NCBI GenBank assembly: GCA_964035545.1
Contig: OZ037768.1
Location: forward strand, 23,035,319 to 23,099,318
Length of the DNA stretch: 64,000 bases
Reading direction: 5' to 3'
Origin: Bugula neritina
Taxonomy: Eukaryota; Animalia; Bryozoa
A program made the translations under genes and the position numbers. The notes below the pieces were generated by a model that saw only the letters and a list, made by a program, of their open reading frames with translations, made no database searches and was not told the origin of the DNA. Below, piece after piece: positions 473-63,745 of this stretch; the first letter of the stretch is position 1; each line of letters starts with the position of its first letter.

Positions 473-709
473 CCTGACACTCTCCCCAGTAGGCAAGCTC
501 CAAGTCTAACTCTGGATTCTCACATCGGGTCACGTCAAACTCGCTGAAAGAATTGTACGTCTGCTTGTTATTTGCGCAGACTGGCTGAGAAGCCTGGCAG
601 AAGTCACCTTGACACTTGCATCGACATTCGGGGACAGGAAGTCCTTCTGCCGAGATCGCCACGTGACAAGTATGGCGTTCATTCGGACACTCGGCTGGCA
701 TGCAAACAA
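473..709 (-). CDS. Gene B exon: atypical follistatin/Kazal domain
   Basis: [14 protein letters not shown]...[36 protein letters not shown]...YWGECQ; 237 nt, phase 1-1. Confidence 0.85.
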
Positions 710-3700
710 CTAGAGGCGAAACAAAATGATCCTTAACCCATTTACACATACAAATGCTGATAGTATGACGTCTGGTAGAGAAGTATATGTAGAGATCTTC
801 CCACTTGACTTACACAAAACACTTACGCTCACAGTGGAAGCCGTTTCCTCGGAAACCCTCATTACAAGTACATCTATAACCGCCTTCAGTGTTGGTACAT
901 TTAGCATTCTCATCACAACTTTGCCCATCCTCGCATTCGTCAATATCTAAAAACACAGGCTAATACTTAGCATATTTCCACACAGACAGCAGAATTCATG
1001 CGGAAGAGTAAAAATGTAGTAATAGTTTCAAAGTATTTAAAAATAAAGTTATGGTACAATTATTACCATTGCTAAGACATATCAATCTAAATATTTTAAC
1101 TGTACAACAAGTAGCTAACTAATAGTAACAAACCATCACAGGTCTGTGCTATTCCATTCCACTTGTAACCACGGTTACACAAGCAATGATGTGTTCCTCT
1201 CTGGTTGACACACCTGGAGTTATCCCCACAAGCATTTTCTATTTCTATGCACTCGTTTATATCTACAATGCAGACATATCCGCGCATCAGTAAGAAACAA
1301 GATGGCTACCTACTATTAAATATGGCAGTTAAACAAAAACAGTTAGAATTTTATTAACTCCCTCACCTATACAATGAGTGTTGTTGTACTTGTAGCCACT
1401 CAGGCATTCACATTTATATGTACCAGCGGTGTTAACACACTTGGCAGAGCGAGGACACGGGGAGGGCCCTTCGAGGCACTCGTCCACATCTACAAGAAAC
1501 AATGCACTCAGTCTATGCTAAGGCAAAGTAAAAAGGCTATAATCATATTCAACTCAAATGAATTAAGTGCCAAAGATTGTAAAAAACCGCTAGAACTGTG
1601 GAAAAGCAAAAAAAATGGTTAAATTATTAGAAGTTGGCAAGAACCATGTTTACTGTTATTGTGACCAGATAATATTTACCTGCACAACTTTTGCCTGACC
1701 CAACATATCCCTCTCTGCACTCGCACCTATAAGCTCCATCTAGATCAATACACTCGGCGTTATCATGGCACAAGTGAAGGCTCGGCTTTTCACACTCATT
1801 GATATTAACACAACTATTTTCTTTCTGCAAGTAAAAAAAAGTTTAAAGAAATTGAGATGTAGATTTGACAAATTAATCAATTAGCAAACTGTGCACTAGT
1901 TTCAATAATAAATTCATATTTAAGACTTGACAATGACTAAATATCACTATTAAAAGTCTCAACAGCAGACCCACCTTCTTATAACCTGCTTTACAAACAC
2001 ATTCATAGGAGCCTTCCTTATCTTCACACTGCTGATTATCTGGACATACCACATTGTCCTCTACACACTCATCGATGTCTACATGAACAATATGCACAGT
2101 TGTGATATACCTTTGGGCACTCACAATATGTATCGTTACTATATTATACTATAATATTATACAAAAAGTACAAAAGGTACAAGCAGATATGTTTTAAAAA
2201 TTGCAAAAGATGATGCTTTCAATTAATTCTCCAAAATAAAATAACTGGTTGATTGATGTGCAGTTCAAATCTATTGATGTTGTAAAAACTGAGCAAAATC
2301 TTCAAGTCCTTGAAACAAGAGAGTGGCAAAAATATTTCAAAAAATGTTTCAATATAAATCCTTACTCCATGCAGACTTCCAAATGCATCTCAAAATTCAA
2401 CATTTCAATTAGGCAAACTAGCAAGGTTATAAAAACATAAACTTTATTCACTTGAGCTAAAACATCACAAAATAAGTTAAGACTAGCAGTATTTACAGCC
2501 AGTTCAGTATGAGACTTACCAACGCATGTAGTTCCACCAAAACCATAGCCATCCTTGCAGTCACAGCTGTAACTACCAACTGTGTCCCTACACGTACCCT
2601 CATCTCCACAAGGGTTTCCCTCAGTGCATTCATTTACATCTGCAAATAATTGAAACAGGTTTTAGTAATAAACTTGTCTAGCTATTTATTATGCAATGTA
2701 TACAGGGCTACTATATCATGCAGCTATAGATAGCAACTACCATATTAACTGCGCACACAGCTATACATAAAACTATATTAAACAGTTATAAAGAGCATTT
2801 CAAATATTTAGTTTACAAACATTATTATATTTCAGTTCACCAAACCTTGTAGATATGTGTACTCAAAGGTATAAACTCTGAACCAACAAAAATTACTCGA
2901 TTACTAAATATTAAAACAATAGTCAAAGTGATAAAAAATGTAATGATTAAAATAAAAGTAAATGCTTTTGTTAAAGATTTTAGTAATGACTTTCACACAA
3001 AAATTAGATTCTGTTTCAAAAACAATTTTGTCTATAGTTTCCACATGTCGTATGGGCATATAAAAACCATTTAAAAAGCTTGAGAATAAAGATATGCATA
3101 GTAGAAATTTATGCAGCCACTTACTCTCGCAGTTAGGGGGCGTACCAGCAAACCCCACCTTGCATTCACAGATGAAACCAGATTCTGATGGTATACAGTC
3201 AGTATTGTATGGACAAGGTGAACCAATATTGCAACTGGTAGCTATAAATAGTAATCAACACGTCTAATAGTCATTGTATAACTATAAATAGTAACAACAT
3301 GTCTAATAGTCATTGTATAGCTATAAATAGTAACAACATGTCTATTAGTCATTGTATATAGCTATAAATAGTAACAACACGTCTAATAGTCATTATATAG
3401 CTATAAATAGTAACAACATGTCTATTAGTCATTGTATATAGCTATAAAAAGCAATATAGCAAATGACAATTACACAGTTGTAGACAATAAACTTTTTATA
3501 AAATATTTTTCAAATGATGATCTTTAAAAGTAAAATTTCTAAGCGTAGAAAAACAATAGTTATGAGTTATACAGGCTTTTTTAACACTAATAGTAACATT
3601 CAGCAAAGCAAGTTTTTATATGATCAGCTTCACATGCTTAGTGAATCTGCTAAATACTATAAGCCAAATTATATTCCATACAACAGTCAACTTAGGCCGA

Positions 3701-6700
3701 GTAACCTATTACACAAAATTTTAAACAACGGAAGTTTTACACATCCTTAAGTTACTATTAAATTAGTTACTAGGTACTATTAACTAGTAACTATTAACTA
3801 GTCACTAGTAACTATAGTAATAAGTGAGCTGAACTTACGCAAGCAATCGCCGTCTGCACCAACTCTATATCCTGTCACACAGACACAAGTCTCGTGATTG
3901 GTGGAGTTACGAAGGCACACTGCGTGTTCCGAGTCGCACTTAAGAGTCTCACATTCGCCAATGACCTCTACAAGTAATGCCACTCACTGTAAGACATCAC
4001 TGCAGATTTGCAATGCTAACGGTACACAATAAAAATCAAAGCAATATGCTAGAGTTATGGCAAAGCCATGAGATCAAATATCATTGAGAGCTTTACAGTA
4101 GCAATGCTATGAGATGCAGACGACACAAAATAAAATATAATAATGAAAAGGCACATGAGTCACCTCAACTTCTACTAATTACAGTTTTATATTTACCAGT
4201 ACACTCAAATCCATTTCCTTCATAGCCATCTTGACAGACACACTCATACGAGCCAACAGTGTTGTTACACCGAGCATGCTCACTGCACTCATTGAGATTT
4301 GCTTCGAGGCACTCGTCGACATCGACGCAAACATTATCAACAGAGCTAAAGCCGTCTTGACAGACACATTCATAGCTGCCGTCAGTGTTGGAACACTCGA
4401 TGTGATTGGTCGAGCTGACATCACATTCATAATCTCCAGTCTCGCATTCATTTATATCTGCAAAAGGAATCGAAACTCAAAACATCGGAAGTCATCAAAC
4501 TAGCTCAACCAGCTAATTATACCATTTCTCAGACGTAGACTAATACATACCCATACGACTAAGTTTTTATTACTTCTAATGCTAATAAAAAGATAGTTTC
4601 AATAACAAAGCTTAAAGCTAAAAACTAAAATTAAAAACTGGGACTAAAAATAGCCTTTGTTTAGTGCTGAGCAATAGATGTTCACATAAAGTAATAAGAC
4701 TAAAATAGATCTGCCATTGAATAGAGGAAATAAACAGAGAGCTGCAATAAACAGTTAGAAGACTAGCATTGAGTACTCACCCTGACAGCCTGTGGATGTG
4801 ACTTTATAGCCATCCGGACATTTGCACGAGTAGGTCTTTGGTAGATTAGTACAGTTACCGGGAGACGGACAGAACCGGTCTATATTCTCTGCTGAACACT
4901 CGTCCAAATCTGTGAAAAACAACTAAATACTATAAGGAAAGAATTTAGTTAAATTAGTTAGAGCAAGATTTTAAAAAGAAATGTACACTCGTCCAAATCT
5001 TCGAACGGAAATTAAAATATGTTAGCAGAGAGAATAAAATGAGGTTGAAAAATAAACTTTTAAATTGAACGTGGCGAAACGATTTATTTTTTACAACAAA
5101 TTCTACAGATGGCTGTATGAAGTCATACATGAAACATACTTCAATGTAACCACACCATTTTTGATAGTGACATAAATAGGTCTACCTACACATAGCAAAT
5201 GCTGTCAATACTTACTCCTACTCTTGCACAATCAGCTACACTTACTCCTACTAATGTACTGTCAGTAATACTTACTCCTACTAATGTACAGTCAGCTACA
5301 CTTACCTACACACTTGCCGTCAACCATCTCGTAGCCAGGAGAGCACACACATTCATACTTCTGAGGAATGGCTCGATTCAGACAGATCACATGATCTCCA
5401 GAGCAGACGGAGGGCTTAGCTAGACACTCATCCACATCTACAGTTAGAATGAGCTCCTTGAATAGTATTTACTAAATGTAATCAACTTACCAATGAAACA
5501 CTTGAAATTTACAGTTTTCAATAAAGAATAAATTGTTTTTATTAAAAAGAATTTAATGTGGACAAAAAATTTCATGACTAATAATTGAATTTTTGTATGA
5601 AAAATTGACCATTAGTGCGAAAAATCCTCAAACTAAGGAGTTATCTCCTCCAAACTAATAGAAATATTGATGACATCACAACCGCCAAGTAAAATCAAAA
5701 GACACAAGAAAGTTTATAAGAGTAGTCTGAACTCACCTCCACACACTTTGCCATTTCCTTCAGTTCCCGGATGACATCTGCAATCGTAGCCGCCATCTTC
5801 TTCTACGCAGTCAGCAAGGGTGTGACAGTTGTGAGCTCCAGTCGTACATTCGGCGACGTCTGCAACATTATCTCATAGAATTATTCGATTATCATTAGCA
5901 TTGCTATGAGTCATCTGATTACCAAAAGTACATTCTATTTTTATCTCTAACTCTAAAAAACTCTTTATTCTCAAAACCTTCTAGTTAATGTTTTTTTAGC
6001 CTCACAATTTTATATTTACTTTATTAAAATGAAGTCAAAAAGTAACAACTCATTCTATATAATACATTGGAGTTACCTTCACAAAAATCCATGTAAATTT
6101 TTAAAGGTTACTGTTTTTCTAACCTAATAATTTATTAAGCAATAAATACAACAAATTAATCACTTATTGTATATTATGCTTTGGAGTTACCTGCACAATC
6201 AAGGCCGTTACCACGGTAACCTTGCAAACAGACACATCTGCTACTGTAGTCGTCTGCTACACATTCAGCATTAGCATGGCATGGGCCGGTGAGAGAACAT
6301 TCCAGATCAGCTGTAGTTGGTAATCAATATATACAGTATCCAGCATACACTATGAGGTCTATATTAGTCCAATACATGTATATGTATGGATAACTGTATA
6401 ATATATTATTATATTATATTATTTTATATTAAATTATTACATATTGCATAGTAATAATCTAACAGACGTACGCAGGCAAAGATCTCCGTCAGGCAGGAAC
6501 CCCTCCTCGCAGGTGCAACTGTATCCACCCTCTGTGTTGGTACACTGAGCATGCTCCTGACACGAGTGCATGCCTCGGTCACATTCATTGATATCTAGAG
6601 GAAAACAACTCCCAATCTAAGCTATATATGTATAATATTCACATTACCACCAAAAAGGATGAGTTCAGATTATTTTAGGAGTTGTCTGCACAAATTATCA

Positions 6701-9700
6701 AGTCGCTTGTAAATAGACACAATAAAGCCTTCAAAACCTTAAAGCTCTACTGTTTATAAAATTGTGAAGTTAATAACAACCAATGACAGGTCTTGGTGCT
6801 CAACAACAACCAATAGAAAGACTATGTCTGCATTGTAACTGAAAAATTGAATTTCTCTTAGTAAAGGGATCAATTCAAAAGACATCTACTATCACCATTA
6901 CAACAAGTCCTATTGGCTGTTATTTTCCAATATTAATTAAAATTTCTAACTCTGTTGACTCCACCACTTTACTATACCATTAAAAGAAAATTTCAGAGTT
7001 TTTTTCTGAGTTATGTACACGAAGATTGTACAATGTATACTATAGACAGGGGAGGGGTCGGTGGGGCACATTCTACAGCAAGTGGAACAAAACAACTTTC
7101 AAGTGCCTATTAATAATACCTTACAGTACAATTCGGATTAAGTTATTCAGTGTTTAAAAACGCTTTTACTTGCTCAAAGTTTTGCTCAAGTACAAATAAA
7201 TTTGAATCTAAATAAAGAGTCAAGTCAAACCAATGGCTGGCTAAGTCAAGGTCACATCAATTCTAGCTGCAAAAGCAGACAACTTCTTAGCATGCTGGAA
7301 ATACTTATTTTCTCTCAAACTTATTACCTTAAGTTCAGCGGACTCACCAGTGCAAACTTTACCCTTCTTGGCATAGCCCTCTACACATTCACACGTGTAG
7401 AACCCAGGCATGTTTTTACAGCTAGAGTGATCTCCACATGCCTCGGGGTCATCGCATTCATTGATGTCTTTGCACACCTGATTGACCTCTCTATACCCGG
7501 AGTGGCAAGGGCAGGTGGGGCCACGCTGTGTGAGAACACATGAACTGTGAATGTCTGGACACGTGTCAGGTTTACACAGACGCTCTGCAGGAAAAAGAGA
7601 AAATACTAGAACAGTTTAAGACCAATTGAACTTCATATATCATCTCTCAATGCGGACATCAGGCAAAACCCACCAAATGCTGTCTGATTTTCATATTAAG
7701 AACTTACTAAAATAATTTTCCATTTTAGCCATCGCAATTTAAAAAAGTTTGCATTTATTCTACTTCATAAAATGCTTGTAAGGAAATATAGCTTATAATC
7801 ACTGTGACCATCTCTACGCCAACTCACCTGGTTTACAGATTTGCCCATCTCTGTAGTAACCTTCGTAACAGTTGCAGACGGGATAGCCGCTGCTGCCGTC
7901 ACATGTAGAATGTTCCGGACAGCGGATACTCTCGTCACACACCAAAACTTCGCACTTCTGTCCGTTCCACTCTCCGCCGAGACACACGCAGTCATAGCCG
8001 CCATCTTTGTTGACACACATCCTGTCATTGGTGCATTCGTGAGAGACTATGCATTCATCTATATCTTGACATTTGTCTTCTTGTAATGAATTTATCAGAC
8101 TGTATCCAGAGTCGCATTGGCAGCCATCTTGAGCAGCGTTACACTTGCCATTCTTACCGCAGCCACAATCTGACGGTACAACATTTAAATGATTTGCAAT
8201 ACAACAGAGTAGATTATCAGTCTGAAGCTTGAAAAGGAAAACTAATTTATTGTTTGGGGTAGCTTTGAAAACTATTTGAACCAATAGCTTATTCTTTGAG
8301 CTTGTACTAAAAAAAAATTAAAAAACTCAGCTAAAAATTGCATTTATAAATAAAACGTTTGTTTTTTGAGAAAATAAATTATTGATATTGCAGAGCGTTT
8401 TTATAATTTTTTTACATTTACCTCTAGATAATCTAAAGCTGAGCTTGAATTATCAATTATCAGTAAACAAGTTTTTTCTGCAAACTATGGCATTCGTTAC
8501 TTTAGTATCAAAATATTGAGAAAATTTAGCACAATTTTCATTCTCCAAAAGTCTGACATGAAAACTTTCTGAAAGCTAACAAATACTTCAAGAGCTCCAA
8601 CTAACAGTTGAATAGCAGTCAACATCGTTTACTGAATATACACAGATTTCCAGAAACTTCTCTTAGATGTCTCACCTCTCAGAGGTTGACAGCGCATAGC
8701 CTCTCTTTCACGAACACAATGCTCGTTGTTGCCTTCACAATCGTCATCCACTCTGCACTCATCCTCCGAGTGACACCGGACTCCGTCTCCGGTATAGCCA
8801 GCTGCACAGGTGCACCCGTACCCACCAGGAGTGTTGGTGCAGACGCCATTAGCAGCAGAACACAGATGCTTCTCCAGACACTCATCAATATCTTCACATG
8901 TAATGAAATGAATATAGTTTCAAGAAATAGACTAAAACTTTAGTAGAGAAACACTTGATAGTCTAATAACGCTGTGAAAAAAGCTTTGTGAAGTAATAAA
9001 AACACAAGAAATGCTCAGTATTTCTGTAAACTGGAAACAGATAAAATAGCCAAGTGAACCAAGTTAACTATAATATGAACTAGGAAGTGCAGGGCTTGTC
9101 AGTAGAGTGAGTCGATGAAATCAGTTGGTAGTGAGACGGTTGGCTAACAGAATTATATGCTAGTGAACTGTTGTAAAAATTGTCATCAACTCAAATTGAC
9201 AACTAGTAACTGAAAATGATAGAGTGTGTAATATTAACCATTTCATATAAAAACTCAACTGAAATGGAATTGAAGTTGTCTTCTATCTGGTATTAGTATA
9301 AACTAACTATAAAGTATCTAATACTACAGAAAGCTACAAGTTATATCCTACCAGTACATTGAGGGTTAGACTTAGAGCCAATATTTCTGTATCCAGGCTG
9401 ACACAAACAGACTGATTTCCCTTCAATAACTCCGGAACAATAGGCATTATCTCCACATGATCCTGGCACGCAATCTTTGCTATCAGAGGCTAAAAAGAGC
9501 ATTATATCTTTATATATTAATTACAATACCTACAAATATTTCTGGTAAAAGTATAAAACTCTTCATTATTAGGATTAAAAATCAAGTTATACTCATATTT
9601 GCATCAAAAAGCGATTCTGTAAACAATGAAAGACTTACCTTTACATACTTTCCCATCTCCTTTGTACCCCTCATAGCACTCACACCTGTATCCACCCAAT

Positions 9701-12700
9701 GTATTTATACAGTTGGCTTCTCTTGAACAGAGATATTCTTCAGCACACTCATTGATATCTGAATGTTTCAATAACTTGGTTATAATGCAGTATAATTATA
9801 TTATTCTAAATAAATATAATTATTTAATGTGCCAATTATTGAATGAACAGTGAAGGTATATAAAATATCATAACACCTTTTGGATAAAATAAAAAAACAT
9901 TATGGATAAAATGAAACAATTAAAAGTTGTGTCGTATCCTTTTAGTAAAGGTAATTACCAACTCCCACACAAACACTCACCGACGCAAGTCTTATAATTT
10001 CTATCGTAGGTATATCCAGGTTTACATAGACAGGTGTAACTCCCTTTTTTGTTGAGACACTTAGAATCAGGTGGACATTCATCCTCATTCAGTAGGCACT
10101 CATTGATGTCTATTTGGAAATTCATATTTATAAAATCTATTTAGAGGCTTAGACATGTATGAAGATGTTTATACATGCTGACTAGATGCTATTACGTGAT
10201 GATAAGAGCTTTCTAAGTGTACTTCTAACAGATTGAAAGTTGGCAAAACAGCTGTTAAATAACAAAATGCTTACCAAAACATCTTCCAGTTGAGACGTCT
10301 CTATTGTATCCATCCGGACACAGACACTCGGCTTTTCCAGAGGAGCTGTCACAGCGGCCATCTTTACCACAGTACGCAGACGCACAGGGATTTTCCGGCT
10401 CTAGAAACAGTATACAGTGAGAGTATACAGTGAGAGTATACAGTGAGAGTATACAGTGAGAGTACACAGTGAGAGTATACAGTGAGAGCATACAGTGAGA
10501 GTATACAGTGAGAGTATACAATGAGAGTATACAGTGAGAGTATACAGTGAGAGTATACAGTGAGAGTATACAGTGAGAGTATACAGTGAGAGTATACAGT
10601 GAGAGTATACAGGTACAGTATACAGTGAGAGTATACAGTGAGAGTATACAGTGAGAGTATACAGTGACAGTATACAGTGAGAGTATACAGTGAGAGTATA
10701 CAGTGAGAGTATACAGTGACAGTATACAGTGAGAGTATACAGTGAGAGTATACAGTGAGAGTATACAGTGAGAGTATACAGTGACAGTATACAGTGAGAG
10801 TATACAGTGAGAGTATACAGTGAGAGTATACAGTGAGAGTATACAGTGAGAGTATACAGTGAGAGCATACAGTGAGAGTATACAGTGAGAGTATACAGTG
10901 AGAGTATACAGTGAGAGTATACAGTGAGAGTATACAGTGATAGTATACAGTGACAGTATACAGTGACAGTATACAGTGACAGTAAAACGTCAAATTGACT
11001 CTTGTATATTTTCAATGGCATTCAATTGCATAGATATGAAAGTCACCATGATAATAATGCTAGTACACACTTTTTTAAAATAACTTAGACGTGTTACATA
11101 TTTATTGGTTGATGTAAAGCAGAAACTTATTGATATTGATAACCTCCCACTCTGAACTATTAGATATTACATGATTCTCAGACTTTATACATGAAACTAT
11201 TTTAATCCTGAAGAAATGGTAAAGTGAGTTCTCAATAAATCTGTTTTGAAGTCGTGTGGTTTATAAAGAACAATTAGGAATAGATACAACTTCTATCCCA
11301 CACACACCTGTTGAGCATTCTACCTTCCCATCCCCGGAGTAGCCATCTTTACACTTACAGAGGTACATTCCCGGGACATTCACGCAGTCGGCATTCTCAT
11401 GACAATCACTCTGTCCTGTCTTACACTCATCTACATCTACAAGTTGTTGTGTATAGAAAGCGTTTAGAGTAAAATATATTGTAAATATATAGTATCATAG
11501 AAAATATTTAAATTAAACTATATAAACTAGGCGAATTTAAAAACCAAAAATTGTTATATAACCAAAACATTTTCATAAGTGTAACATGATACAAACCCCA
11601 AAAAATTATATAAAGGTTGAAAATCACAACCCAAAAAATGTATACCGAAAAGTTTTTAAAGTATTGCAGATCATAAATTATTATCCAGAAAAAAACTTAA
11701 AAGTAAAATAACAAGAAAGATTAGAACAAAGTAAGTATTTTAGAAATCAATATGAAAAATGCTAATAAATATTCATTCGGCGATACAGGAGTAGGTGACT
11801 CACCTACACATCCGGGTTTCCCGTCCATGGGAAAACCCAGGCCAGAGAATCCATATACACAGATACAGTTACCATCAAAGCAGTCAGCATTGAAGTCACA
11901 TACAGTATCACCACACACTATCCCGGCAGCTGAAACAGTTTGAGTCTCACAATAGACAGTTTATATGTCAGCAGCTTAAACATAATAGATTACTATATAC
12001 ATACATGTGTATGTATATTATGTTAGATTATTATATAATCTAATCATGTATACTGTATATGTATGTATATATGTATATATTACACATGTATGAATGTTTA
12101 ATCTCAGTAATCACCATGTGAAAAATGAAGTATTTACTAAATACAACAATACAGATAGTAATGCTGATTAATAATCAATAATACAATATAATATATTATA
12201 TATTACATATTACTATATTACACTTTACTACACTATATATTACTATATTATATTATAATATATTACTATAATATATATTACTACACTATATATTACTACA
12301 CTATCTATTACTACACTATCTATTACTATACTATATATTGCTACACTATATATTACTATAATATATATTACTACACTATCTATTACTATACTATATATTA
12401 CTATACTATATATTACTATACTATATATTACTACACTATATATTACTATAATATATATTACTACACTATATATTACTACACTATATATTACTACACTATC
12501 TATTACTACACTATCTATTACTATACTATATATTGCTACACTATATATTACTATAATATATATTACTACACTATCTATTACTATACTATATATTACTATA
12601 CTATATATTACTATACTATATATTACTACACTATATATTACTATAATATATATTACTACACTATCTATTACTATACTATATATTACTATACTATATATTA

Positions 12701-47398: not shown

Positions 47399-47440
47399 GA
47401 TTAGAGAGAATACACAGAGCCGTAGCTCTCACCACACATC

Positions 47441-48166: not shown

Positions 48167-48167
<1 letters not shown>

Positions 48168-48807: not shown

Positions 48808-49526
48808 TTAAGTCTTTTTGACACAGTGGCAAGAGGAGGGGGTCTTGACCTAAAACAGTAAAAAAGTCAGTATATAAGAATATCAAATCCATATATTAAT
48901 AACTCAATTTGCTAAAAGCTACAATTCTTGTAAGAAACTATCATTTTATTTCTATGAGCTAAGAACTTCCGAGAAGCAATGCAGGCGAGATGGCTCTTCC
49001 AACATCACTGATAATGTTTACAAGGTTTTATTCACAGGCAACTTTTACTAACCAGGCACTGTTTACTCTCACAATAATACATGTCTAGACTTTACCAAGA
49101 TAGGAAAAATCCAGCCTTCATGGAAACTGCAATTTTCATTACCAAAACTACTTTCAAACTTGTCATTTGATCAAAATTATTAAGAATAAAAAACCTTTAT
49201 TTTTATTCAAATTTTTAAATAAATAAATTCTTTAACAAGAAGTGAAACTGTGGACATATGATATATTGGTCTGTATGATAGACAGATGAGAAAGCCAGGT
49301 AGATAAATGTGTCAAACTCTAACCTGCTCCAAATATCTGATGTCATCACACTGAGTAGGTACAGTGACACTAGTATACTCCAGAGGCTCACAGCAGGTGC
49401 CTGTCACGTTGCCACAGGTGCCTGCGCACTCTCTCAATGACACATGGTACTTGCTGGGGCATCCATTGACTGTTATCCTTTCAAACTTGGGTTTGAGTTG
49501 GCAATGGCTTTCAATTCCAGGCTCAT
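48808..49526 (-). CDS. Gene A C-terminal cystine knot; exons 49324-49526 and 48808-48849 (absent from the ORF track)
   Basis: CQLKPKFERITVNGCPSKYHVSLRECAGTCGNVTGTCCEPLEYTSVTVPTQCDDIRYLEQ|VKTPSSCHC shows CxGxC, CCxP and CxC. Confidence 0.85.
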
Positions 49527-51936: not shown

Positions 51937-54900
51937 CAGTAGTAGTAGCAGTAGTAGTAGTAGCAGTAGTAATGTAGTATATATTTATATAGTATTTATT
52001 AAACGAATTGCACAAAAAATCAAATCAAGTTTCTCTGAATAAAACACAGAGTAAACCTGCAACAAATGTAGTAAAGTGGTTTTTGTTACTGAAATGTTTT
52101 AACTCAGCTGATGTAGTTTGTAGGACTATGATGAGTAAGCTTGATTGGGCATAGCACATGTTAACTAGTTGAGTAATACAGAGAGAGTGAAATTAGTATA
52201 AACATGAAACATTAGCTATTTAACAGATAGCTGTTCATAGCTTTTTCTCTGAAAGCTTTTTACAGCTTTTTCTCTGAAAGCTTTTTATAGCTTTTTCTCT
52301 GAAAGCTTTTCAATAGCATTTCCTTTAAAAGCTTGTATAGTAATAATGCTACAACACAACATAGTTAGAACTCCTTGTAAGAGAATTACCATTTAAATAT
52401 TTTAATTTCTACCATGTTTATATACTTCCACCAACCTTCACAGAAAAATCCATTTCCGCGATATTCAGCTTTACATTCACAAGAATAACTTCCGAGAGAG
52501 TTGATGCACGTGGCGTTGTCATGACAACTGTGTTTCTCAGACACACACTCATCGATGTCTACAATAAACAGTGTATGAGAACACTTTGAATGCCTATTTA
52601 GAAATCAGAGGTAAATTACGGGCTCATTTAGAGGACAGATAATTTCTTATATTAAACACAAATATCACTAATAATATAAACATTAAGCTTTGTTTTTCTG
52701 TGATCTGATTATACAATATAAACCTTGCAGGTATAATGTGTAAGACATTCAATAATATGCTAGTGAAATAAATAAATATGTTTTTCAGGTGCAGCAGGAA
52801 AGGAAATCTGTTGAATTAGTAAACAGGTGTAACCCACAGATTATATAATAAAACACATGAAATAATCAAAGGTGACTTTTAGCATGATCTAATCAAGTTG
52901 GAAATAAAACTTAAAATAATGTGAACACTCAAACTGTATCAACCAATCAAACTGCGTAACTCAAATTAGTATATAAACCAATCAAACTGCGTGACTCAAA
53001 CTATATCAACCAATCAAACTGCGTGACTCAAACTGTATAAACCAATCAAACGGCGTGACTCAAACTATATCAACCAATTAAACTGCGTGACTCAAATTAG
53101 TATATAAACCAATCAAACGGCGTGACTCAAATTAGTATATAAACCAATCAAGCGGCGTGACTCAAACTATATCAACCAATCAAACTGCGTGACTCAAACT
53201 ATATAAACCAATCAAGAGTAAGTTCTGACTCACCGACACAAGTATGACCTTGAAGATGAAAGCCAGGATAACAGAAACACTGGTATTTGCCAATCATATT
53301 GACACAGTAACCGTCCAATCCACATATGTCATAGTCTTCATAGCATTCATTGATGTCTACAAAAACATTTCTATATATCATTTACTCAAGTAAGAACAAT
53401 GCGAAAACATCAAGTTATTTTTTCCATTCAGTTGTGTCTAACAGACGTCAAGAAATTTCTTAGCGAATGCTGAAAGCTGAAATATTTTTTAAAAACAAAT
53501 CATGGCATTCATTAACTAACAAGTGTTTTAACTTATTTAACATTTACTGTTGATAAAATTGCTGAAGACAAAATCATTGTGGAGAAAGATATTTCACAGG
53601 AATATGCTCTCAATAAATTATAACCACTTTAACATCCTAAATAAAGCTTCTACCCAAAATCTTATATGCACTAGTATATCTATAATATAATATATTATAC
53701 ATATGAAAAGAAGTTAGGTTTTAATTACTATAGTGCATTGTGCTACAGTTACATGTGTAGTGACTGTAGTTATACACACATGTATAACTACAGTCATTGC
53801 ACACATGTATAACTACAGTCACTACACACATGTATAACTACAGTCACTACACACACACCCACACGAGTACAGAGCATGCCACAAACTTGCTCACCTTCAC
53901 AGCTACTACCTCCATCATACCTGTACCCAGAATAACATTGACAGTCATAGGATCCAGCTGAATTTATACACTCTGACAGGTGGGGACATACGGGCGGGGA
54001 GAGCAAGCACTCGTCTATATCTGTAACAAACATAGGTCCTTAGTCTATACCAATTCATAGCCTGTGACTACTATTTCACAAACGAAGCAGCTGCTGTATA
54101 AATTCTAATGTTGATTAAACCTTATCAGCAAAATTTATCCGTTATTTGGGGGGGAGACCTGCAATGACCCCAAACCTCAAGGTAAATGCACAAAAAATGG
54201 TCTAACAAAATACGGATAGAAAACTAACTAACAAAGCACTATTTATATTTGGAATGCTAGTTACCTTGACACAGTAGATATGAATATTTTCAAATTTAAA
54301 TAAAGTTATCATTTTATCCAACCACTATGAGAGAAAACAAATCTTATATATATACACACGGGGATTTAATAACAGAAGCAGACAATTTCTATTAGAGCTA
54401 TATAACGGAAGCAAATAACTCCTATCAGAGCTATATAACGGAAGCAGATAACTCCTATCAGAGCTATATAACGGAAGCAGACGACTCCCACCTGAACAGT
54501 TGACTCCATTTCCTTCATATCCAGGAATACACTGACAGTAGTAGCTGCCAGCTGTGTCATAGCACCAAGCGTTGAGATTACATGGGTACACCTCCGACCT
54601 GCACTCATCTATATTCTCACACTGACCGTATATCTGTAACAGACAGACAATATGGCGCGCAACCTTCATAGCAGTCAAAGTGATTATAGTCTAATTTCAC
54701 AAAGAATATTTCGAAATTATTTTTCATTTAAAACCAATATAAATCCTGATTGTTTAGTCAAGCAGATGTGACAGTTGAAAACATGCCATTCAATTCAGCA
54801 TTCAAGAGAGTAAAAACAATAAACCAAAGAGGTAAGGTCTACCATCATCTTATTTAGATACTTAGTTTCGTGCCGCCATGGGTATGAGTAACAGCGTCTC

Positions 54901-57900
54901 TAAGGCTATGTTTAACTTGTAATGTAAAGCTGATGGGAAGTCTGTAGATGTCTTCATATACTTCTGTTGGGAACTTTGTTGGTATTATGGATTATATTTA
55001 ACCGGAAGTATTTCAGAAGATTTCATTTTATTCCAGAAGATGAAAAGAAGTAAAGCTACATCAAGCAGTTATACTGAGTATTATAAAACATGTTCAAAGG
55101 CATGATAACTCCAAAAGAGACAATAAAACGTGAGTGCAACTCTGAATTACAAGTTTAGAAAGTTGTTTTACTATTTCTTTGGATTAGTAAATTAAAGTAA
55201 AGTTTTATCTGAAACAACTAGACAGCATTTAAACAAAGAAACACACATATTCTGCTGCAGATAACATCTACTAACCATTTCATATCCCGGCAGACAGACA
55301 CAAGTGACAGAGCCTGGCAGGTTCTCACACATCTGATCAGAGTTACATGTGAAAGGGTCTTCACACTCATCAACGTCTGCAAAAGACAACTCCAAAATAA
55401 TTGTTTGACAGCATTGGATAATATCAATTTTAAACTTACATAACACCAAATTCGAAGTTGCTTTTTCAGAAAGAGTCATGAAAATTCCCAATCAAATAGA
55501 CAAAAAGACACATATAGGCTGATGGATGGTGAGTGTAAATAAAAAGTCAAGAGTTGTGGGACGCTGCATAACTATGAATTAAAAAATTGCGGATATTTTT
55601 TGTAAACTTGTGAAGATTTATAAATGCACAGAACATACATCCTGTAAATATTTAAATAAACTATAATCCAAAGAGAGAGCTATTAATATATTACACTGTA
55701 AATATAATACACATACTATACAAAACATTAATAAAAAAGTTTTTATAAATTCCTATAAATATGCTTAATGATGATTTTAGGAATATTTACAATAACAAAA
55801 CAGTAAACTATTATTTACCTTGACACGATTTCCCATCAAAAGTGTAACCATCCCTGCATTTGCAAATGTAACTACCAACAGAGTCTTGGCATTGGGAGTT
55901 ACTTCCACATACATCTGCCACATCCTCACACTCATTGATGTCTACACAAAGTATCAGATTAGAAGTGAGTGAATGGATGAAAGTACAGCGAAACAGACCT
56001 CCAAATTTTCCAACTTGTATACTGAAAGATGTTAATATTGTTTATTTCTCTTGATGCGGTTTTGTTTACATTACATGTGAATCCAGGTGCAACAAATTTT
56101 AGCCAAGCATATGTTGAGTGATACAGAGAAAAGTTTTCAAATTTTTCTAGAAAACTTTTTTTGTGGGTGAGCTAGAAGAGCCTTGTTAGAATTTGCTCTA
56201 AACAAATGTGTCACGTGTCTAAAAGCTGGTAACATGGTGTAGGACCTTGTACAGTAGTGCAGAATGAGTTTAACTGAATACCACAGGAGACTGCAGTTGC
56301 TTCTTTGTACTGTCTTGTAAATGTTGATAAAAATATGAAATACACAGCTTAGTCAAATGGACTTTGAGCCTGACAGCTTACTTGTACATTCTTGACCAGT
56401 TCCTGTAAAACCACTTTTACATTGGCAGCTGTACGTTCCTGTTAGCTCATTAGAAATGCAGTCAGCAGTAACTGGGCAGACTGAGGGAGAACTGCATGGA
56501 TCAGCTACAATGTGATCAGTAATAATATAGCCAGTTATAATAATAGTCAGTTATAATAATAGTCAGTTATAATAATAATCAGCTATAATAATAATCAGCT
56601 ATAATAATAGTCAGTTATATTATAGCCAGGTATTTTCTAAAGCTCGTGGTTGTTATCTATAATCTATATGGTCAGTAGATTTACTAAATCCTAAGCACTC
56701 TACTAATATAAAAAATGCTAATTGATAGAAAACCTCAAGTGTTTGCAAACTCTGTGTTAACTTTAAATGCTTAAATAACCTGTATCACATTTAGGTAGTT
56801 TTTAAAATTAGAAACACTTTATCAAAAAAAATCTATAACACTAATATGGTGCCCCCCCCCCCCCGCTAGTATAACATAGCAGTATGGAGAAGTTGATTTC
56901 AAATTTAACTAAGTACAGTACGATTAACTGACTAACAGTACGACTAACTGACTCATAGTACGACTAACTGACTTGTATGACTCACCAACGCAACTCCCCT
57001 TCTCAGAGGTAAGAAACCCACTCCTACAGATACACTCTTCAACTCCATCTGAGCGTGTCACGCAGACAGAGCTTCTCTCTTCACACTGTAAAGTCTCACA
57101 CGGCACATCAATAGCTGAAAATATAAGACTGTAAGTTAGGTACGAGTTAAGAGAAGCAGTATGCAACTACTACAGGTAATACAGGGTTTTAGCACCAAAA
57201 GATGCTTTTAAATTTTGTTGATAATTTTTGTTTTACTGTAACGTTTCTCCTAAAGATTTTTATCACAACACATGCTCTTTAAATATCAGAGAAAATCTAC
57301 AGTTCATAGAGGTGACTAAACAGATTGAGGCTATCTTGAATCCTAAATGCATGAAGCAATCTAATTGGTGCCTTAAAGAACACGCTTTTAGATGAATTTC
57401 GAACGATTTAACATTAAATGCCTGCTGCACACTTGAAAAATCAGAAAGGCAAAAACTGCTTTCTTCTTTTAAATTACTAAAAGATATACTCAAGAAAGAA
57501 GCTAAATGTTACCAAACAATATTAAAAACGTGAAATAATATGACTGGGAGAGCACGCTTACGCATACAGTTGAAGCCATTTCCTTCATAACCTTCACGGC
57601 AGCGGCACTGGAAGCTGCCGTCGGTGTCTGTACAGTCAGCATCAACATGGCAGCCGTTAAAATTCTTCTCGGCACACTCGTCAACGTTCACACAGGAGCC
57701 AAGGCTATTCCTCTCATAACCCTGCTGACATACGCACGCATAGCTGCCGACACTATTCTCACAGACAACGTGACGGGCTGGGTCAGAGTCACATGGTGAC
57801 TTAAGACATTCGTTGACGTCTGCATAGAACAAGAACGCTTGTCAATCCAAACAGAATGGCCAGGAAACTAAATATATTTATATATATGCGGTTTATATCT

Positions 57901-60900
57901 GAAGAATACAACTCTATGTGTCAAGCCAGAACTGATGAACACGGATCACATGCAATTACATCTATAAAACCTACTAACGGTGTATGAGGCGACACATAAG
58001 AGTTGTAAAGTACATAGAATTATAACAAGAGTGTATGCAAGTGTAGGGCTAAAGATTACAGGTCCAACTGCAGATGTTTAACACAGTTGTAGCTTAGAAG
58101 CAATGATCTCTCCTGTCACTACCACAATCTCTAAACAGTACCTCTCATCAATGTATCTGTCCTACATATTTATACTCACCCTGACAGCCTGTGGATGTGA
58201 CTTTGTAGCCATCTGGACATTTACACGAGTAGGTCTTCGGTAGATTAGTACAGTTACCAGGAGACGGACAGAACCGGTCTACATTCTCAGCTGAACACTC
58301 GTCCAAATCTGTGAAAAACAACTAAATACCATCAAAAAATAATTTAATTAAACTAGTTAGAGCAATATTTCAAAAAACAGGAAATAGTGAGTATAACAAA
58401 TGTTGTTTTAGATTTAAAATATTTAATACTAGTTTATTAGTAATTTGACTGCATGATTTGCTGAATACTAACTAAAAATTTAGTCGCAAAAGAAATAAAA
58501 AACTAAAAATTTATCCTTTTAGAAACATAGAGTACTCCTGTTTAAGTATAATTATGATCCAAAATAGTTTTCCTTGGCTGTGCGAAATATTCTAGTATTG
58601 CAAAAGCATTTCTGTCAACGGAATTATCCAGCCCTTACCAACACACACTCCGTCCTGCATTACAAATCCTAGAAGACAAGCACACTTGAAGCTACCCGGA
58701 GTGTTTAGACAAACTACATTCTCTCCTTGACATGACGTGGTAGTGTTGGCACATTCGTTAATATCTGAAGTATGTACGACATACACTAATAAAATATAGC
58801 ATAAGTTGCAATTAAAACAAAATACAATGCACATTTATAGACTGTTAACCATTCATGGCTTGTACGCCTTGACCAACTGCAAATCTTTTTTTTTTCAGTT
58901 ATAATCAACTGAATTTTTTTTTACTTTGACTAAACTTAACAAAAAAACTCAAACATTTATAGCAAATATCGCATTATACATTGGGGTAGATTTTTTAAGC
59001 ATTTGACTTTTAAGCCGCCAGTCTTTTGCATTGTTAGAAATCTTCAGATTTGATTAAAAATATGCTATTAGCACATTTAAACAAACTCAAGCTTGATAGC
59101 TCAATGATACATCTTTGACATTTATATCTTCCTCTATCGACTATCATAGAATATATTTTACAAATTTGTTTAAAATAAGTGGCTGAAGTCATGTAATTTA
59201 CTTGAAGTAGAAGCACTAAGCTGTGTGATGTTTTAAAAAGTAGACAAGAAATATTTACTAGTAGACGTGTAGACAGTCTTACCTTCACATCGTAACCCGA
59301 GTTTAACAAACCCATCATCGCAGACGCACTCATAGGCCCCGTATGTGTTCACACACATGGAGTTCTTAGGACAGTAGGCTAAGCCAGACTCACACTCAGA
59401 TACATCTACGGACACAGCAAATATTCTGCTGACCGGTTCTACTAGGAAACTAGGCTATATTTCTTATTTTCATTAAAATATCAACATCATACAAGGTTTC
59501 AATGGTACTCTCTAAGCCCTAAGGCTTTCAACAGCTGAGCAACTTTTATATTCATAGTTACACAAAATTCATTTGCCAATTACTCCCTACTTCCACATCC
59601 CAGAGACATTTAATTTTATGAAATAAAATAAAATAACCAATGAAATCAAATAAAAACATGTAAGTTAAACGTATAGATTTCATGTCGGTAGAGAAAAAAG
59701 CTGTATGGATTAGGAATGTACTATTCAAGGTTGAATTGCTTTCTTTGAAAGTCCTCGTCTTCATGCATGGCAAAATAATGCTTGTTTTTACTAGATTAGT
59801 TGAAACGAGTGAATTTCAAACTTTCCATCAACACAAATCAGTGCTATTTATTAAAAGATGTAACTCCCACTAGCTCAATATAATGCTTATATGATTTGAA
59901 AGCTTCATACACAGCTGATGCACCAAGTCAACTCTTCTACTAGTCAAATCACCAGAAGTGTTAGTAATCAACTCACTTTACGAGGGTTATGTTGTAAACT
60001 AAAAGTAAAGCATACCGTCGCAGTGTGTGCCATTGCCTTCAAAACCTTCTCTACACAAACACTTCCACAGACTGCTTCCCCTATCAACTGTGCAGTCAGC
60101 CTTAGAGTGGCAGGGGCCATGTTCTACGCAGGCGTAGTCAGCTGTAAAGAGGCAAAACTCCAGTAACTAAGGCTATGCATATACCTTTGCAATTACCATC
60201 TGACAAAACCTCTGTGGTGTATCAACTACATACAATGCTTCCTAAACAAAACGTAGAGTTATTGCTGTGGAAAAGCGATCAAACAGAAAAACCTAAACCC
60301 TGCCAATACAGACTCATTACATCACTGTGTTATATGTGGCCCCATCCCCCCATTTAGCAAATTAGCCACCAACAAGGTTGTAAAAACTAATATGTTGTGT
60401 ATACATTAACACCTTTGTTTCCTTACTTCTTATTCACTAGATCTTTTTGTTCATGCAACTTTTCGCATTTTCCTGGTGCAGAACTCAGGTATACTTTTCT
60501 CTAATCCATAAAGTTTTACCTTACAGTGCTTCTTCAAATTATAAACCATAACTGTAGAATGGATGTGATACTACTACAGAGTATAGCCTGTGTACCCTAC
60601 TACAGAGTATAGCCTGTGTACCCAAGCTAGATCTTTACTCACGCAGGCACGATGTGATGCCGTCCCCAATGTAACCGGACAAGCAAGTACACGTGTAACT
60701 CCCCTCCGTGTCTGTGCATTGGGCATCCACATGACAGTCAGTAGCTCCCTCTGTACACTCATTGTAATCTACAGGAACACAGCGGCAGTGGTGTATGTAT
60801 AAGTACAGTGCATGACACACAGACAGTCAAACAGACACACAGACAGCCAGACAGACACACAGACAGCCAGAGACACAGACAGCCAGAGACACAGACAGAC

Positions 60901-63745
60901 ACACAGACAGACACACATAGGCACATAGAAGACACACAACAACTGCTATATTTCAGGTTACACAGCATGAAAATTATATTACAATCCTGCTACTAAATAA
61001 ATTAGTCTTTTCCAAAAATAAATTAAATACTAGCTTAAAGTCATGGAAGATTTTCTACAATCACAGCATCTGCTTAGCACAGCTACAGTCAACTATACTC
61101 TCTACCTCTTCCTTACACGACATCTCAGTCAATACTCTGCAACTCTTCAACTTATAAACAAACACTGAATGTCCTCAAGTTTTAGAATAACAAGATTAAC
61201 TTTCTGAACAGTTTTTGACCAACTTACTAATGCACTTTCCGTTGCTCCGTTTGAACCCATCCTCACATTCGCACTTGTAATACCCAGGTTTGTTGATACA
61301 GTTGCCATGACTACCACAGGAAACAGATCTGCACTCGTCGACATCAGTGCACACACCATCTACACGTTCGTAGCCGGCAATGCACATGCACGCAGGTTCT
61401 TCATAGTAAGAGTCTACGCACACACTGTACGGTTGTGCAGAGCAGTCCATGGTGTAGCATGATCCTAAACGTGAGAAAAGGTATAATACGTAGACATAGT
61501 AATTTATGGAAGTTAGCAAAACTGATTGGATTGTATTAAAGTGATGGTATATCTAAAAGTTTCCTTTATAAGAAATTTAAAATTAGGCTGAATACAGATG
61601 CAGAAGTGATTATGAGATATAAACTTACCTATGACTTTCTCGCAGTAAAACCCGTCTCCAATATATCCGGCATTGCATGTGCACACAGGAGAGTTGTACT
61701 GTTCAGAGCAAGTGGCGTGTCTATGACAATTCACTCCGCTTGTATCACAAACATTGGTAACTATATCAATAAGCAACATTAACAAGTACTCTAGGGTAAT
61801 ATAAAATAGTACTCTAGAAGTAATATAAATAGTACTCTAGGAGTAATATAAAATAGTACTCTAGAAGTAATATAAAATATACTCTAGGAGTAATATAAAA
61901 TAGTACTCTAGAAGTAATATAAAATAGTGTCTCAATGAAAAAGCTGGCAATGTGATATGAATACCAGAAATAACCTTTTGCAACACAAACTATTCCATAC
62001 AAAACTTATATCACAAAAAATAAGCATTAAATTCACATTAATAAATAAATAAAATACTTATACTGAATCGTCACATAATAAAGGCCAACAAATTAGAGTT
62101 TGTTAGACTAAATTCTTTGACTTTCCTATTCCACGCTACTAATTGCATTACTCAGTGGACACAGTGTAAACTAGAAGTGACACAGTCTATACGAACCACA
62201 CTGGTAGCCGTCCCAGGTGCCTGTAGCGCACACACAGGTATAACTACCAGGAGTGTTGACACACACTCTATACTGAGCATCTTCACAGGGGTAGTCCACG
62301 CATTCATCTATGTCCTGGCAGCGACTATACCACAGGAAGCTGACTTCTTTGTATCCAAAGTCACATACACAGCCGTCAAAGTCAGCGTTACAACTGCCGT
62401 ATTCCCTGCAACCACATTCTACAAGCAGATGAAATAATATACTTTTATAGGAATTTGTATCCTTATACAAGGACACATGCCCTCTCACAGGGGCACACAT
62501 CCTCTCCCATAGATTTAACAAAAGCTTTGGAGTTTATTTTAGTTATATAACATAAAATTTGAGTTAAAATATATTATCATTGTATTTGTTATCTGTCCCT
62601 AACTTTGTATTTATAGACATCTTTAATTTTCTTTAACCATGAGCCCTTGTTATAGTTTGTATACTGAGAAAATGTAAATCTTTCCAGTAAAACTAAAAAG
62701 TATAACCTGACAGATAGTCTTACACAAGGAAAAGTTTTCTTAAAATATTATAAGTTTTGCTACAAAACAGCTATTTCAGCTGTATAGACTTGACATAATA
62801 TATTGTTAGATTTACAGTTTATATACTATACAGTTTATATACTATACAGTTTATATACTATACAGTTTATATACTATACAGTTTATATACTATACAGTTT
62901 ATATACTGTACAGTTTATATACTGTACAGTTTATATACTGTACAGTTTATATACTGTACAGTTTATATACTGTACAGTTTATATACTGTACAGTTTATAT
63001 ACTGTACAGTTTATATACTATACAGTTTATATACTATACAGTTTATATACTATACAGTTTATATACTATACAGTTTATATACTATACAGTTTATATACTA
63101 TACAGTTTATATACTGTACAGTTTATATACTGTACAGTTTATATACTGTACAGTTTATATACTGTACAGTTTATATACTGTACAGTTTATATACTATACA
63201 GTTTATATACTATACAGTTTATATACTGTACAGTTTATATACTGTACAGTTTATATACTGTACAGTTTATATACTGTACAGTTTATATACTGTGCAGTTT
63301 ATATACTGTACAGTTTATATACTATACAGTTTATATACTATACAGTTTATATACTATACAGTTTATACACTATACAGTTTATACACTATACAGTTTATAC
63401 ACTATACATTTTATATACTATACAGTTTATATACTATACAGTTTATATACTATACAGTTTATATACTATACAGTTTATATACTATACAGTTTATATACTA
63501 TACAGTTTATATACTATACAGTATATGAAAGTAACCTGGTAGAGGGAGGCAGTCGTAAGAGCCAGGTATATTTACACACAGGTATTCCTCATCACAAGCA
63601 TAGTAATCAGCACACTCATTGATGTCTTCACAGATCAGGCCATTACCACGATATCCTTTGGTGCAGTTACACTCGTAGAGGCCAATGGTGTTAGTGCAAA
63701 CAGAGTGGGATGAACAGCTGGACCCTTCTTCACACTCATTGATGT
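48808..63745 (-). CDS. Gene A (multi-exon, 5'-incomplete): EGF(n)-follistatin/Kazal(2)-TSP1-follistatin/Kazal-CTCK protein, paralogue of gene B
   Basis: 24 phase-compatible exons ending VKTPSSCHCVKKT* (TAA 48808-48810). Confidence 0.88.
49980..50210 (-). CDS. Gene A follistatin/Kazal exon 3
   Basis: CLNYTCARPGADC...PYCECPVGC...VCG...TFYNKCMLRRISC...YEGTC, 10 Cys. Confidence 0.85.
50238..50403. repeat. (GAGT)n microsatellite
   Basis: Directly visible. Confidence 0.95.
50588..50752 (-). CDS. Gene A thrombospondin type-1 exon
   Basis: GEWSELGECSVTCGNGIQTRHRQ...PCSLSPC; phase 1-1, 165 nt. Confidence 0.88.
51017..51827 (-). CDS. Gene A follistatin/Kazal exons 1 (51606-51827) and 2 (51017-51235)
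   Basis: CECTC...FCGTDGVTY...YWGKCQ and CDKVYC...PVCRCPVC...GPVCSSLAITYESYCAL...C. Confidence 0.87.
51901..51970. repeat. (TAG)n microsatellite
   Basis: Directly visible. Confidence 0.95.
52436..63745 (-). CDS. Gene A block of about 21 EGF/cbEGF domains plus one truncated EGF (18 exons)
   Basis: D[IV][ND]EC cbEGF consensus in most exons, e.g. 52436-52558, 53234-53356, 57562-57819, 58180-58308, 63536-63745 (some ends approximate). Confidence 0.92.
52927..53215. repeat. 31-35-bp minisatellite x9 (AACCAATCAAACTGCGTGACTCAAACTATAT)
   Basis: Directly visible, next to the donor at about 53233. Confidence 0.93.
54375..54480. repeat. 33-bp tandem repeat x3
   Basis: ggaagcagataactcctatcagagctatataac. 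Confidence 0.88.
60814..60916. repeat. Compound (GACA/CA) microsatellite
   Basis: Directly visible. Confidence 0.85.
61786..61927. repeat. 24-bp minisatellite x6
   Basis: agtactctagRagtaatataaaat. Confidence 0.9.
62813..63524. repeat. 16-bp satellite (TRTACAGTTTATATAC)n, about 44 copies
   Basis: Directly visible; the source of the spurious 241-aa ORF. Confidence 0.97.

What the first reader, a model, noticed from the sequence alone, without database searches (positions are those of the whole stretch)
473..63745. Tandem pair of giant WSC-mucin-fibrillin hybrid genes: candidate undescribed adhesive/gel/matrix polymer system
Seen: gene B is SP-WSC23-ShKT2-VWD-C8-TIL-EGF~40-FS..., and gene A is ...EGF-FS-FS-TSP1-FS-CTCK. 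Known: VWD-C8-TIL plus a C-terminal cystine knot is the polymerisation chassis of gel-forming mucins and VWF; cbEGF arrays form Ca-stiffened rods in fibrillins; WSC domains are putative glycan binders. Inference: the full architecture is a mucin-type polymer in which a cbEGF rod replaces the Ser/Thr/Pro region and a 23-valent WSC head is added. It could serve in adhesion, mucus, tube/cuticle or microbe capture, and the paralogues might co-polymerise. I do not recognise this combination, but I cannot search to confirm novelty.
Basis: partly seen in the sequence, partly recalled or inferred. Interest (0 to 1): 0.85.

Follow-up and report, generated by a model that had tools for sequence, protein, structure and literature searches.

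The report
Bryozoan twin mucus scaffold protein genes
Two neighbouring giant genes in a bryozoan-like genome encode secreted rod-shaped proteins built on an old animal design also used by a protein found in limpet foot mucus, and one copy has grown a new head of 23 putative sugar-binding domains; they are not true gel-forming mucins.

Summary
Two intact tandem paralogues lie on the minus strand: gene A (54 exons, 2705 aa) and gene B (97 exons, 4757 aa). Both read signal peptide, head, one VWD(GDPH)-C8-TIL-E unit, 40 EGF, FS-FS-TSP1-FS, cystine knot. B's head has 23 WSC plus 2 ShKT; A's has 1 WSC plus 3 ShKT-like. Closest sequences are Bugula neritina (about 93%). The mucin-polymer reading fails: one D4/FCGBP-type unit, no D3 cysteines, no PTS region. 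The body is not new: the same order occurs in Trichoplax and eight molluscan genera, including limpet pedal-mucus protein P-vulgata_2, identified here by sequence; those carry fibrinogen/COLFI-like heads. Flatworm cohesive ap1 has a similar layout. I found no paper describing the family or its two conserved unpaired cysteines (a 9-Cys knot and a 7-Cys EGF), which suggest disulfide dimers and possibly polymers. The WSC head looks lineage-specific and is evolving concertedly. No transcript spans head and body; function is inferred. The scan noted the WSC array before on this same DNA only.

The parts
47350..47398 (-). Gene B exon 1: start codon and signal peptide (16 codons, phase-1 donor); TATA-like box at about 47476
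   Evidence: conserved in second assembly
28099..47029 (-). Gene B WSC array: 10 tandem a+b units (20 WSC, 40 exons), coding identity 97-99.8%, unit length 1.6-2.7 kb
24705..27354 (-). Gene B WSC 21-23 (divergent copies; the last resembles the single WSC of gene A)
23451..24400 (-). Gene B two ShKT-like domains (3 exons)
   Evidence: 6-Cys pattern; local analysis only
18915..22782 (-). Gene B single D assembly: VWD with GDPH (residue 2316), C8, TIL (8 Cys, one pair lost), E/TILa
   Evidence: colinear with gene A exons that pass Pfam cut-offs
827..18204 (-). Gene B EGF rod, 40 modules, net charge about -170
13875..13997 (-). Gene B 7-Cys EGF exon (family signature, spare cysteine, residue about 3100)
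473..709 (-). Gene B first follistatin/Kazal domain; FS2, TSP1, FS3 and cystine knot follow outside the window (L013:9832 down to 7801)
47399..48807 (.). 1.4 kb spacer between gene A stop and gene B start
48808..49526 (-). Gene A cystine knot (2 exons, 9 Cys) and stop
   Evidence: same end in KAF6037352
49980..51827 (-). Gene A FS-FS-TSP1-FS
52436..63745 (-). Gene A EGF rod, in-window part (exons A31-A48). The 5' part lies right of the window in L003 and L004 (start codon at L004:7755): signal peptide, 2 ShKT, 1 WSC, degenerate ShKT, VWD with GDPH, C8, TIL, E, first EGF exons including the 7-Cys EGF at L003:5795-5917

Best explanation
Genes A and B are old tandem duplicates of an ancient, apparently unnamed family of secreted scaffold proteins (head - one VWD/C8/TIL/E - EGF rod - FS-FS-TSP1-FS - cystine knot) and most likely act as cohesive components of a mucus, glue or surface coat. 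Shown from sequence: secretion signal, no membrane anchor, domain order, two modules with an odd cysteine. Inferred: (1) chains dimerise tail-to-tail through the spare knot cysteine (aligned to the first C of the VWF CC pair); (2) the acidic 40-EGF rod stiffens in seawater calcium and spaces the heads roughly 100 nm from the knot; (3) GDPH self-cleaves and the head stays attached by disulfide, as in FCGBP; (4) the conserved seventh EGF cysteine forms a second inter-chain bond, either zipping the dimer (as the extra MUC2 C-terminal cysteine does) or linking dimers into a network; (5) the interchangeable head gives ligand specificity, and in B 23 WSC domains give avid binding to glycans on biofilm, substrate, cuticle or microbes.
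For: Intact, selected genes. Same body in Trichoplax H2 RDD42651 (43 EGF-like motifs after VWD) and in Lottia, Patella, Gigantopelta, Batillaria, Pinctada, Potamilus, Sinanodonta, and (tail only) Solemya: tails 27-35% identical over 314-366 aa. [quoted passage not shown] Flatworm ap1 (lectin-VWD-C8-TIL-EGF17-19) is a cohesive glue protein by RNAi (PMC6410801, PMC8621496, PMC9229212). Knot has 9 Cys in all 15 family sequences listed. The 7-Cys EGF motif occurs in A, B, Trichoplax and every mollusc member and in 0 of 3168 EGF sites of the other proteins fetched. An intronless environmental contig joins 22+ EGF to the knot in one 1409-aa frame. GDPH kept in all members.
Against: No expression, localisation or biochemical data for these genes. 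P-vulgata_2 was low in abundance (FPKM 28) and gave no specific in situ signal. Orthology to flatworm ap1 was not tested and ap1 lacks the FS/TSP1/knot tail in its published domain lists. WSC also binds proteins (Kremen; PMC9024836). The knot lacks two of the three VWF inter-chain cysteines and a 10-residue loop, so the dimer interface must differ. The AlphaFold monomer of the 7-Cys EGF (pLDDT 75) does not show which thiol is free. The D-assembly tree does not resolve the family as a clade.
Confidence: 0.55

Rival explanations
1. Internal extracellular-matrix protein: a microfibril-like or basement-membrane rod whose FS-FS-TSP1-FS-knot tail binds growth factors or heparan sulfate, as follistatin, agrin and CCN-type modules do.
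For: Tail conserved from Trichoplax to bryozoans; cbEGF rod; knot matches Norrin, sclerostin, Gremlin folds; presence in sessile bivalves that lack a creeping foot.
Against: No TB domains (the true fibrillin hits carry PF00683, the family members do not); limpet member recovered from mucus; fast head turnover and concerted WSC expansion fit an outward-facing ligand.
Confidence: 0.2
2. Pattern-recognition or microbe-trapping lectin: the multivalent WSC head agglutinates microbes or food particles, and the body merely anchors it in surface mucus.
For: WSC binds beta-glucan in fungal proteins (PMC9024836); WSC is expanded genome-wide (at least 146 matches); fibrinogen-like heads in other members are also typical of recognition proteins (own knowledge).
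Against: The WSC copies are homogenised (97-99.8%), not diversified as immune receptors usually are; gene A has one WSC only.
Confidence: 0.13
3. One reading: a mucin/VWF-type linear polymer built by VWD-C8-TIL head-to-head links plus knot tail-to-tail links, with EGF replacing PTS.
For: VWD-C8-TIL and a genuine CTCK are present; CGLC/CGMC motif kept in VWD.
Against: Single D assembly, no D1D2, even cysteine count in VWD, C8 and TIL, C8 closest to D4/D2/FCGBP; no Ser/Thr/Pro-rich region (maximum 0.375 in 40 aa).
Confidence: 0.06
4. The WSC array is a separate gene or is mostly expressed as a short product that ends before the VWD.
For: No transcript spanning WSC to VWD was seen; the last WSC exon can read into the intron to a stop; the draft annotation splits these genes into pieces.
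Against: No second signal-peptide exon was seen before the VWD; phases match; gene A has the same WSC-ShKT-VWD junction with homologous exons; the draft also splits the EGF rod, which an intronless contig shows to be continuous.
Confidence: 0.06

Closest known systems
P-vulgata_2, limpet pedal mucus protein (XP_050406643; PMC7333891) and its molluscan orthologues
   Same: Signal peptide, one VWD with GDPH, C8, TIL, E, EGFs, FS-FS-TSP1-FS, 9-Cys short-loop cystine knot, 7-Cys EGF; alignable over the D assembly (25-27%) and tail (27-31%, P. caerulea copy).
   Different: Head is EGFs plus repeated fibrinogen/COLFI-like domains, not WSC/ShKT; only about 4-5 EGF between D assembly and tail, against 40.
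Trichoplax sp. H2 RDD42651 (annotated 'Fibrillin-1', 4339 aa)
   Same: Whole body including a rod of about 43 EGF and both odd cysteines.
   Different: COLFI-like repeat head; uncharacterised; automatic name is misleading (no TB domain hit).
Flatworm cohesive adhesion protein ap1 (Mlig-ap1, Mile-ap1, Tmed-ap1)
   Same: Lectin-type head, one VWD-C8-TIL(-VWC), long cbEGF series; works like a cohesive linker.
   Different: One C-type lectin, 16-19 EGF, Lys/Arg-rich flanks in Macrostomum, no FS/TSP1/knot tail reported; sequence not compared here.
Gel-forming mucins and von Willebrand factor
   Same: D4-like VWD(GDPH)-C8-TIL followed, after a Cys-rich spacer, by a C-terminal cystine knot: resembles the C-terminal part of MUC2.
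   Different: No D1-D2-D'D3, no PTS, EGF instead of VWC, knot with 9 rather than 11 Cys.
FCGBP, zonadhesin, alpha-tectorin
   Same: GDPH-type VWD-C8-TIL-TILa unit.
   Different: Those repeat the unit many times and have no knot.
Fibrillins
   Same: Long cbEGF arrays.
   Different: No TB/hybrid domains, no furin motif found.

Membership tests
Gel-forming mucin / VWF | Three N-terminal D assemblies (D1-D2-D'D3) | tested here: not met
   One VWD per gene
Gel-forming mucin / VWF | D3 inter-chain cysteines (VWF 1097/1099 and 1142; PMC8847404) | tested here: not met
   Even Cys counts; C8 aligns to MUC2 D4, FCGBP, VWF D2
Gel-forming mucin / VWF | Large Pro/Thr/Ser-rich O-glycosylated region | tested here: not met
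   S+T+P 16-18% overall, at most 37.5% in any 40 aa
Gel-forming mucin / VWF | C-terminal cystine knot able to dimerise | tested here: inconclusive
   Knot fold met; only one of three VWF inter-chain Cys kept; dimer not testable
Fibrillin | Tandem cbEGF arrays | tested here: met
   26-27 cb starts in 40 EGF
Fibrillin | 8-Cys TB and hybrid domains | tested here: not met
   Every rod exon is a 6-Cys EGF multiple or accounted exception; no TB Pfam hit in P0045 or other members
P-vulgata_2 / RDD42651 family (defined here) | Single VWD(GDPH)-C8-TIL-E, EGFs, FS-FS-TSP1-FS-knot in this order | tested here: met
P-vulgata_2 / RDD42651 family (defined here) | 9-Cys short-loop knot and one 7-Cys EGF | tested here: met
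P-vulgata_2 / RDD42651 family (defined here) | Head of EGF plus COLFI/fibrinogen-like repeats | tested here: not met
   Replaced by WSC/ShKT; one Trichoplax repeat as query found nothing in this genome (not proof of absence)
P-vulgata_2 / RDD42651 family (defined here) | Monophyly of the D assembly against FCGBP/tectorin/hemocytin | tested here: inconclusive
   Polytomy
Flatworm ap1 | Sequence orthology to Mlig-ap1 or Mile-ap1 | not tested
   No ap1 sequence was returned by the capped searches
Flatworm ap1 | C-type lectin head | tested here: not met
   Head is WSC/ShKT
Flatworm ap1 | Expression in adhesive gland cells and loss of adhesion on knock-down | not testable with these tools

The most novel reading that the evidence does not exclude
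An unrecognised, pre-bilaterian family of secreted scaffolds polymerises by a chemistry different from mucins and VWF: tail-to-tail through a 9-Cys knot and side-to-side through a conserved seventh EGF cysteine, with swappable recognition heads; the bryozoan has rebuilt it into a WSC-headed larval glue or colony coat in which A and B co-assemble, their shared EGF modules kept alike by gene conversion.
Probability: 0.2. Interest if true: 0.8.

Novelty: new variant of a known kind. Interest (0 to 1): 0.5.

Why it matters
It links a limpet mucus protein, a placozoan orphan and two genes of a major fouling bryozoan into one family with a testable cross-linking signature (two conserved spare cysteines). 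That gives concrete candidates for the poorly known bryozoan adhesive or surface matrix, suggests that similar domain sets in marine glues can reflect shared ancestry of a whole chassis rather than convergence, and offers a clean case of head replacement followed by concerted expansion. It does not establish a new polymer class without biochemistry.

Tried and rejected
One exception: the Rfam scan covered the whole window by reference, including that stretch. Local scripts also read it. Spliced models were searched exon by exon by reference; the joined models were never sent to a search tool and were only compared inside scripts with proteins already fetched. Two short primers were typed from a paper supplement. 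Rejected: assembly duplication of the WSC array; pseudogene; one fused A-B gene (stop, spacer, TATA, new signal peptide); further paralogues of the tail in this genome (only A and B found); a microsatellite 'exon' at 60821-60942 and a wrong last exon for A proposed by the parser; shared odd cysteine of A and B as independent evidence, since it lies in a conversion tract, until molluscs and Trichoplax confirmed it; Chromera WSC-TSP1 hit P0052 (TSP1-driven, 18% coverage). Metagenome scan for a head-spanning bryozoan transcript returned mollusc-type members (L027, L028) and one locus without a long frame. Paper searches for this architecture, the Lottia locus tag and bryozoan WSC expansion found no description; the library omits most subscription journals. 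P-vulgata_1 may be a further relative by its domain list, but its sequence has no reference here and was left out. One recalled PMC id was wrong and is not cited.

Full report
Setting. The window is G000:C4:23035319-23099318 of a 216 Mb assembly. I fetched 100 kb beyond the right end and 60 kb beyond the left end. The closest database proteins are fragments from Bugula neritina assembly GCA_010799875.2, 92-94% identical to the tails of both genes, so the organism is a Bugula lineage, probably a sister type of that assembly (inference; synonymous divergence about 0.18).

Observation. Cys-rich open stretches lie almost all on the minus strand. A parse trained on the locus and corrected by hand gives two complete genes with only GT-AG introns and no internal stops. 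Gene B: start at 47398, 97 exons, 4757 aa, signal peptide, 23 WSC, 2 ShKT, VWD with GDPH, C8, TIL, E, 40 EGF, FS, FS, TSP1, FS, cystine knot, ending 2.2 kb left of the window. Gene A: start 17.8 kb right of the window, 54 exons, 2705 aa, signal peptide, 2 ShKT, 1 WSC, a degenerate ShKT, then the same body, stop at 48808. Pfam confirms the domains exon by exon, with Kazal and ShK below cut-off. From the last ShKT to the end the genes are colinear exon for exon at 30-50% identity with saturated synonymous sites. Neither has a transmembrane segment or a Ser/Thr/Pro-rich region. Both are under purifying selection against the second assembly, dN/dS 0.17, no cysteine lost over 52 exons, and the A-then-B order is kept there.

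The WSC head. Twenty of the 23 WSC domains form ten a+b units whose coding parts are 97-99.8% identical while unit lengths and the two larger introns differ. The second assembly has at least five such units, more alike within than between assemblies and with fixed differences in all four exon types: concerted evolution, not misassembly. WSC is widely expanded in this genome (at least 146 matches), so the head is most simply a local phase-1 module shuffled in and amplified.

What the body is. A profile of the third follistatin exon found other unnamed bryozoan-like transcripts and Solemya proteins. One environmental contig without introns carries more than 20 EGF through to the knot in one frame, which shows rod and tail belong to one message. 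Following these hits gave long proteins from Pinctada, Lottia, Batillaria, Patella, Gigantopelta, Potamilus, Sinanodonta and Trichoplax H2. All have one GDPH-type D assembly, EGFs and the FS-FS-TSP1-FS-knot tail, alignable with A and B at 24-35% (E-values there are for a small local set). Their heads are EGFs plus repeated COLFI/fibrinogen-like domains. Trichoplax has about 43 EGF-like motifs after the VWD, the molluscs 4-7, so the long rod may be ancestral and the WSC head derived. The tail tree groups A, B and the environmental transcripts (support 85/87, open fork); the D-assembly tree joins A and B (100/100) but does not resolve the family. Homology of the whole body thus rests on domain order and shared rare features, not on a tree.

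Link to a studied protein. Kang et al. (PMC7333891) list P-vulgata_2 (vWFD, EGF x11, Kazal x2, TSP1) in all three limpet pedal mucus types and note similarity to flatworm ap1. The cDNA start in their supplement encodes the N-terminus of Patella vulgata XP_050406643 and their forward primer translates to residues at 1331 of it, so P-vulgata_2 is the limpet member of this family. It was low in abundance and is not among the probes that gave a specific in situ pattern. Flatworm ap1 proteins have a lectin head, one VWD-C8-TIL and 16-19 EGF and are cohesive glue components by RNAi; I did not compare their sequences, so this is a works-like argument.

Polymer chemistry. VWF and mucins join tail-to-tail by the knot and head-to-head by two D3 cysteines, aligned by D1D2 (PMC8847404). 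Here there is one D assembly with even cysteine counts; its C8 aligns best with MUC2 D4, FCGBP and VWF D2 (weak E-values of 0.02-0.2). The layout matches the C-terminal part of a mucin with EGF in place of VWC. The knot is real: family profile to VWF CTCK at E 3e-8, Cys_knot in 9 of 13 members, model pLDDT 94 with TM 0.78-0.79 to VWF knots (Foldseek E-values are weak, 0.004-0.02). It has nine cysteines in every member: the eight intrachain ones plus the first of the CC pair, without the other two VWF link cysteines (assignment from the alignment and my knowledge of the VWF structure). The only other odd module in A and B is one EGF with a seventh cysteine three residues before the last. The same motif is present in Trichoplax and every mollusc member and in none of 3168 EGF sites in the other fetched proteins, mostly fibrillins. 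It lies about 30 EGF modules before the tail in Bugula, about 20 in Trichoplax and 2-3 in molluscs, so pairing with the knot of the same chain is unlikely in the long forms. It may zip a parallel dimer, as an extra cysteine does in MUC2 (PMC10082768), link dimers into a network, or bind another protein; I put these at about one third each. GDPH is kept throughout; such sites self-cleave and stabilise the domain (PMC10880436), with fragments held by disulfides in FCGBP (PMC8267560, title).

Gene conversion. Seven tracts of 95-640 bp are 88-97% identical between A and B, include intron flanks and always pair positionally equivalent EGF exons. At one tested exon the paralogues are as alike as the two assemblies, so that event is not recent.

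Verdict. A real, intact pair; not a gel-forming mucin and not a fibrillin; a head-swapped, duplicated member of an old family whose only studied member that I found comes from limpet mucus. I found no paper naming the family or its cysteine signature, within a library that lacks most subscription journals. Limits: no read data, no transcript across head and body, no function. The joined models were not sent to any search tool. New variant of a known kind; interest 0.5.

Noticed in passing
window 4774-4977, 9629-10132, 11328-11517, 12432-13052, 13861-13954, 14681-15048, 15904-16200 against the matching gene A exons: Seven short gene-conversion tracts (88-97% identity, with intron flanks) confined to EGF exons of otherwise saturated paralogues.
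   Followed up: partly
L003:543-617 (minus): tRNA-Arg(CCT) gene inside a gene A intron, same strand as the gene (Rfam 66 bits, ARAGORN).
   Followed up: partly
L004:4590-4630 (plus): Hammerhead-like core with a four-pair stem II, antisense in gene A intron 7; seen in the sequence and stem II folds, but Rfam gave no hammerhead match.
   Followed up: partly
G000 C3:15.1-15.9 Mb, C5:0.23-0.27 Mb and 3.6-3.83 Mb, C8:5.8-5.9 Mb: Large clusters of WSC exons; at least 146 matches genome-wide, a possible lineage expansion.
   Followed up: no
window 38549-39376: The intron inside WSC unit 5 is 826 bp against 107 bp in the other nine units: an insertion of about 720 bp.
   Followed up: no
L004:8400-9200 and L005: Upstream of gene A: a tandem ubiquitin-like gene, a WD40 gene on the plus strand and a polyubiquitin gene; downstream of gene B the draft assembly annotates an inositol polyphosphate kinase and Sec61 beta.
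   Followed up: no
G000 C1:5.97-6.02 Mb: Two VWD units and a weak knot match (E 0.35) 40 kb further on the same strand: a separate candidate VWD-knot gene.
   Followed up: no
P0060 (Trichoplax RDD42651), P0053, P0055: Heads of about 7-8 tandem COLFI/fibrinogen-like repeats with weak or no Pfam hits; an under-annotated repeat domain.
   Followed up: partly
window 63536-63745 and 8676-8891: One EGF in each paralogue has only four cysteines (last pair lost) at the same position, a possible hinge in the rod.
   Followed up: no
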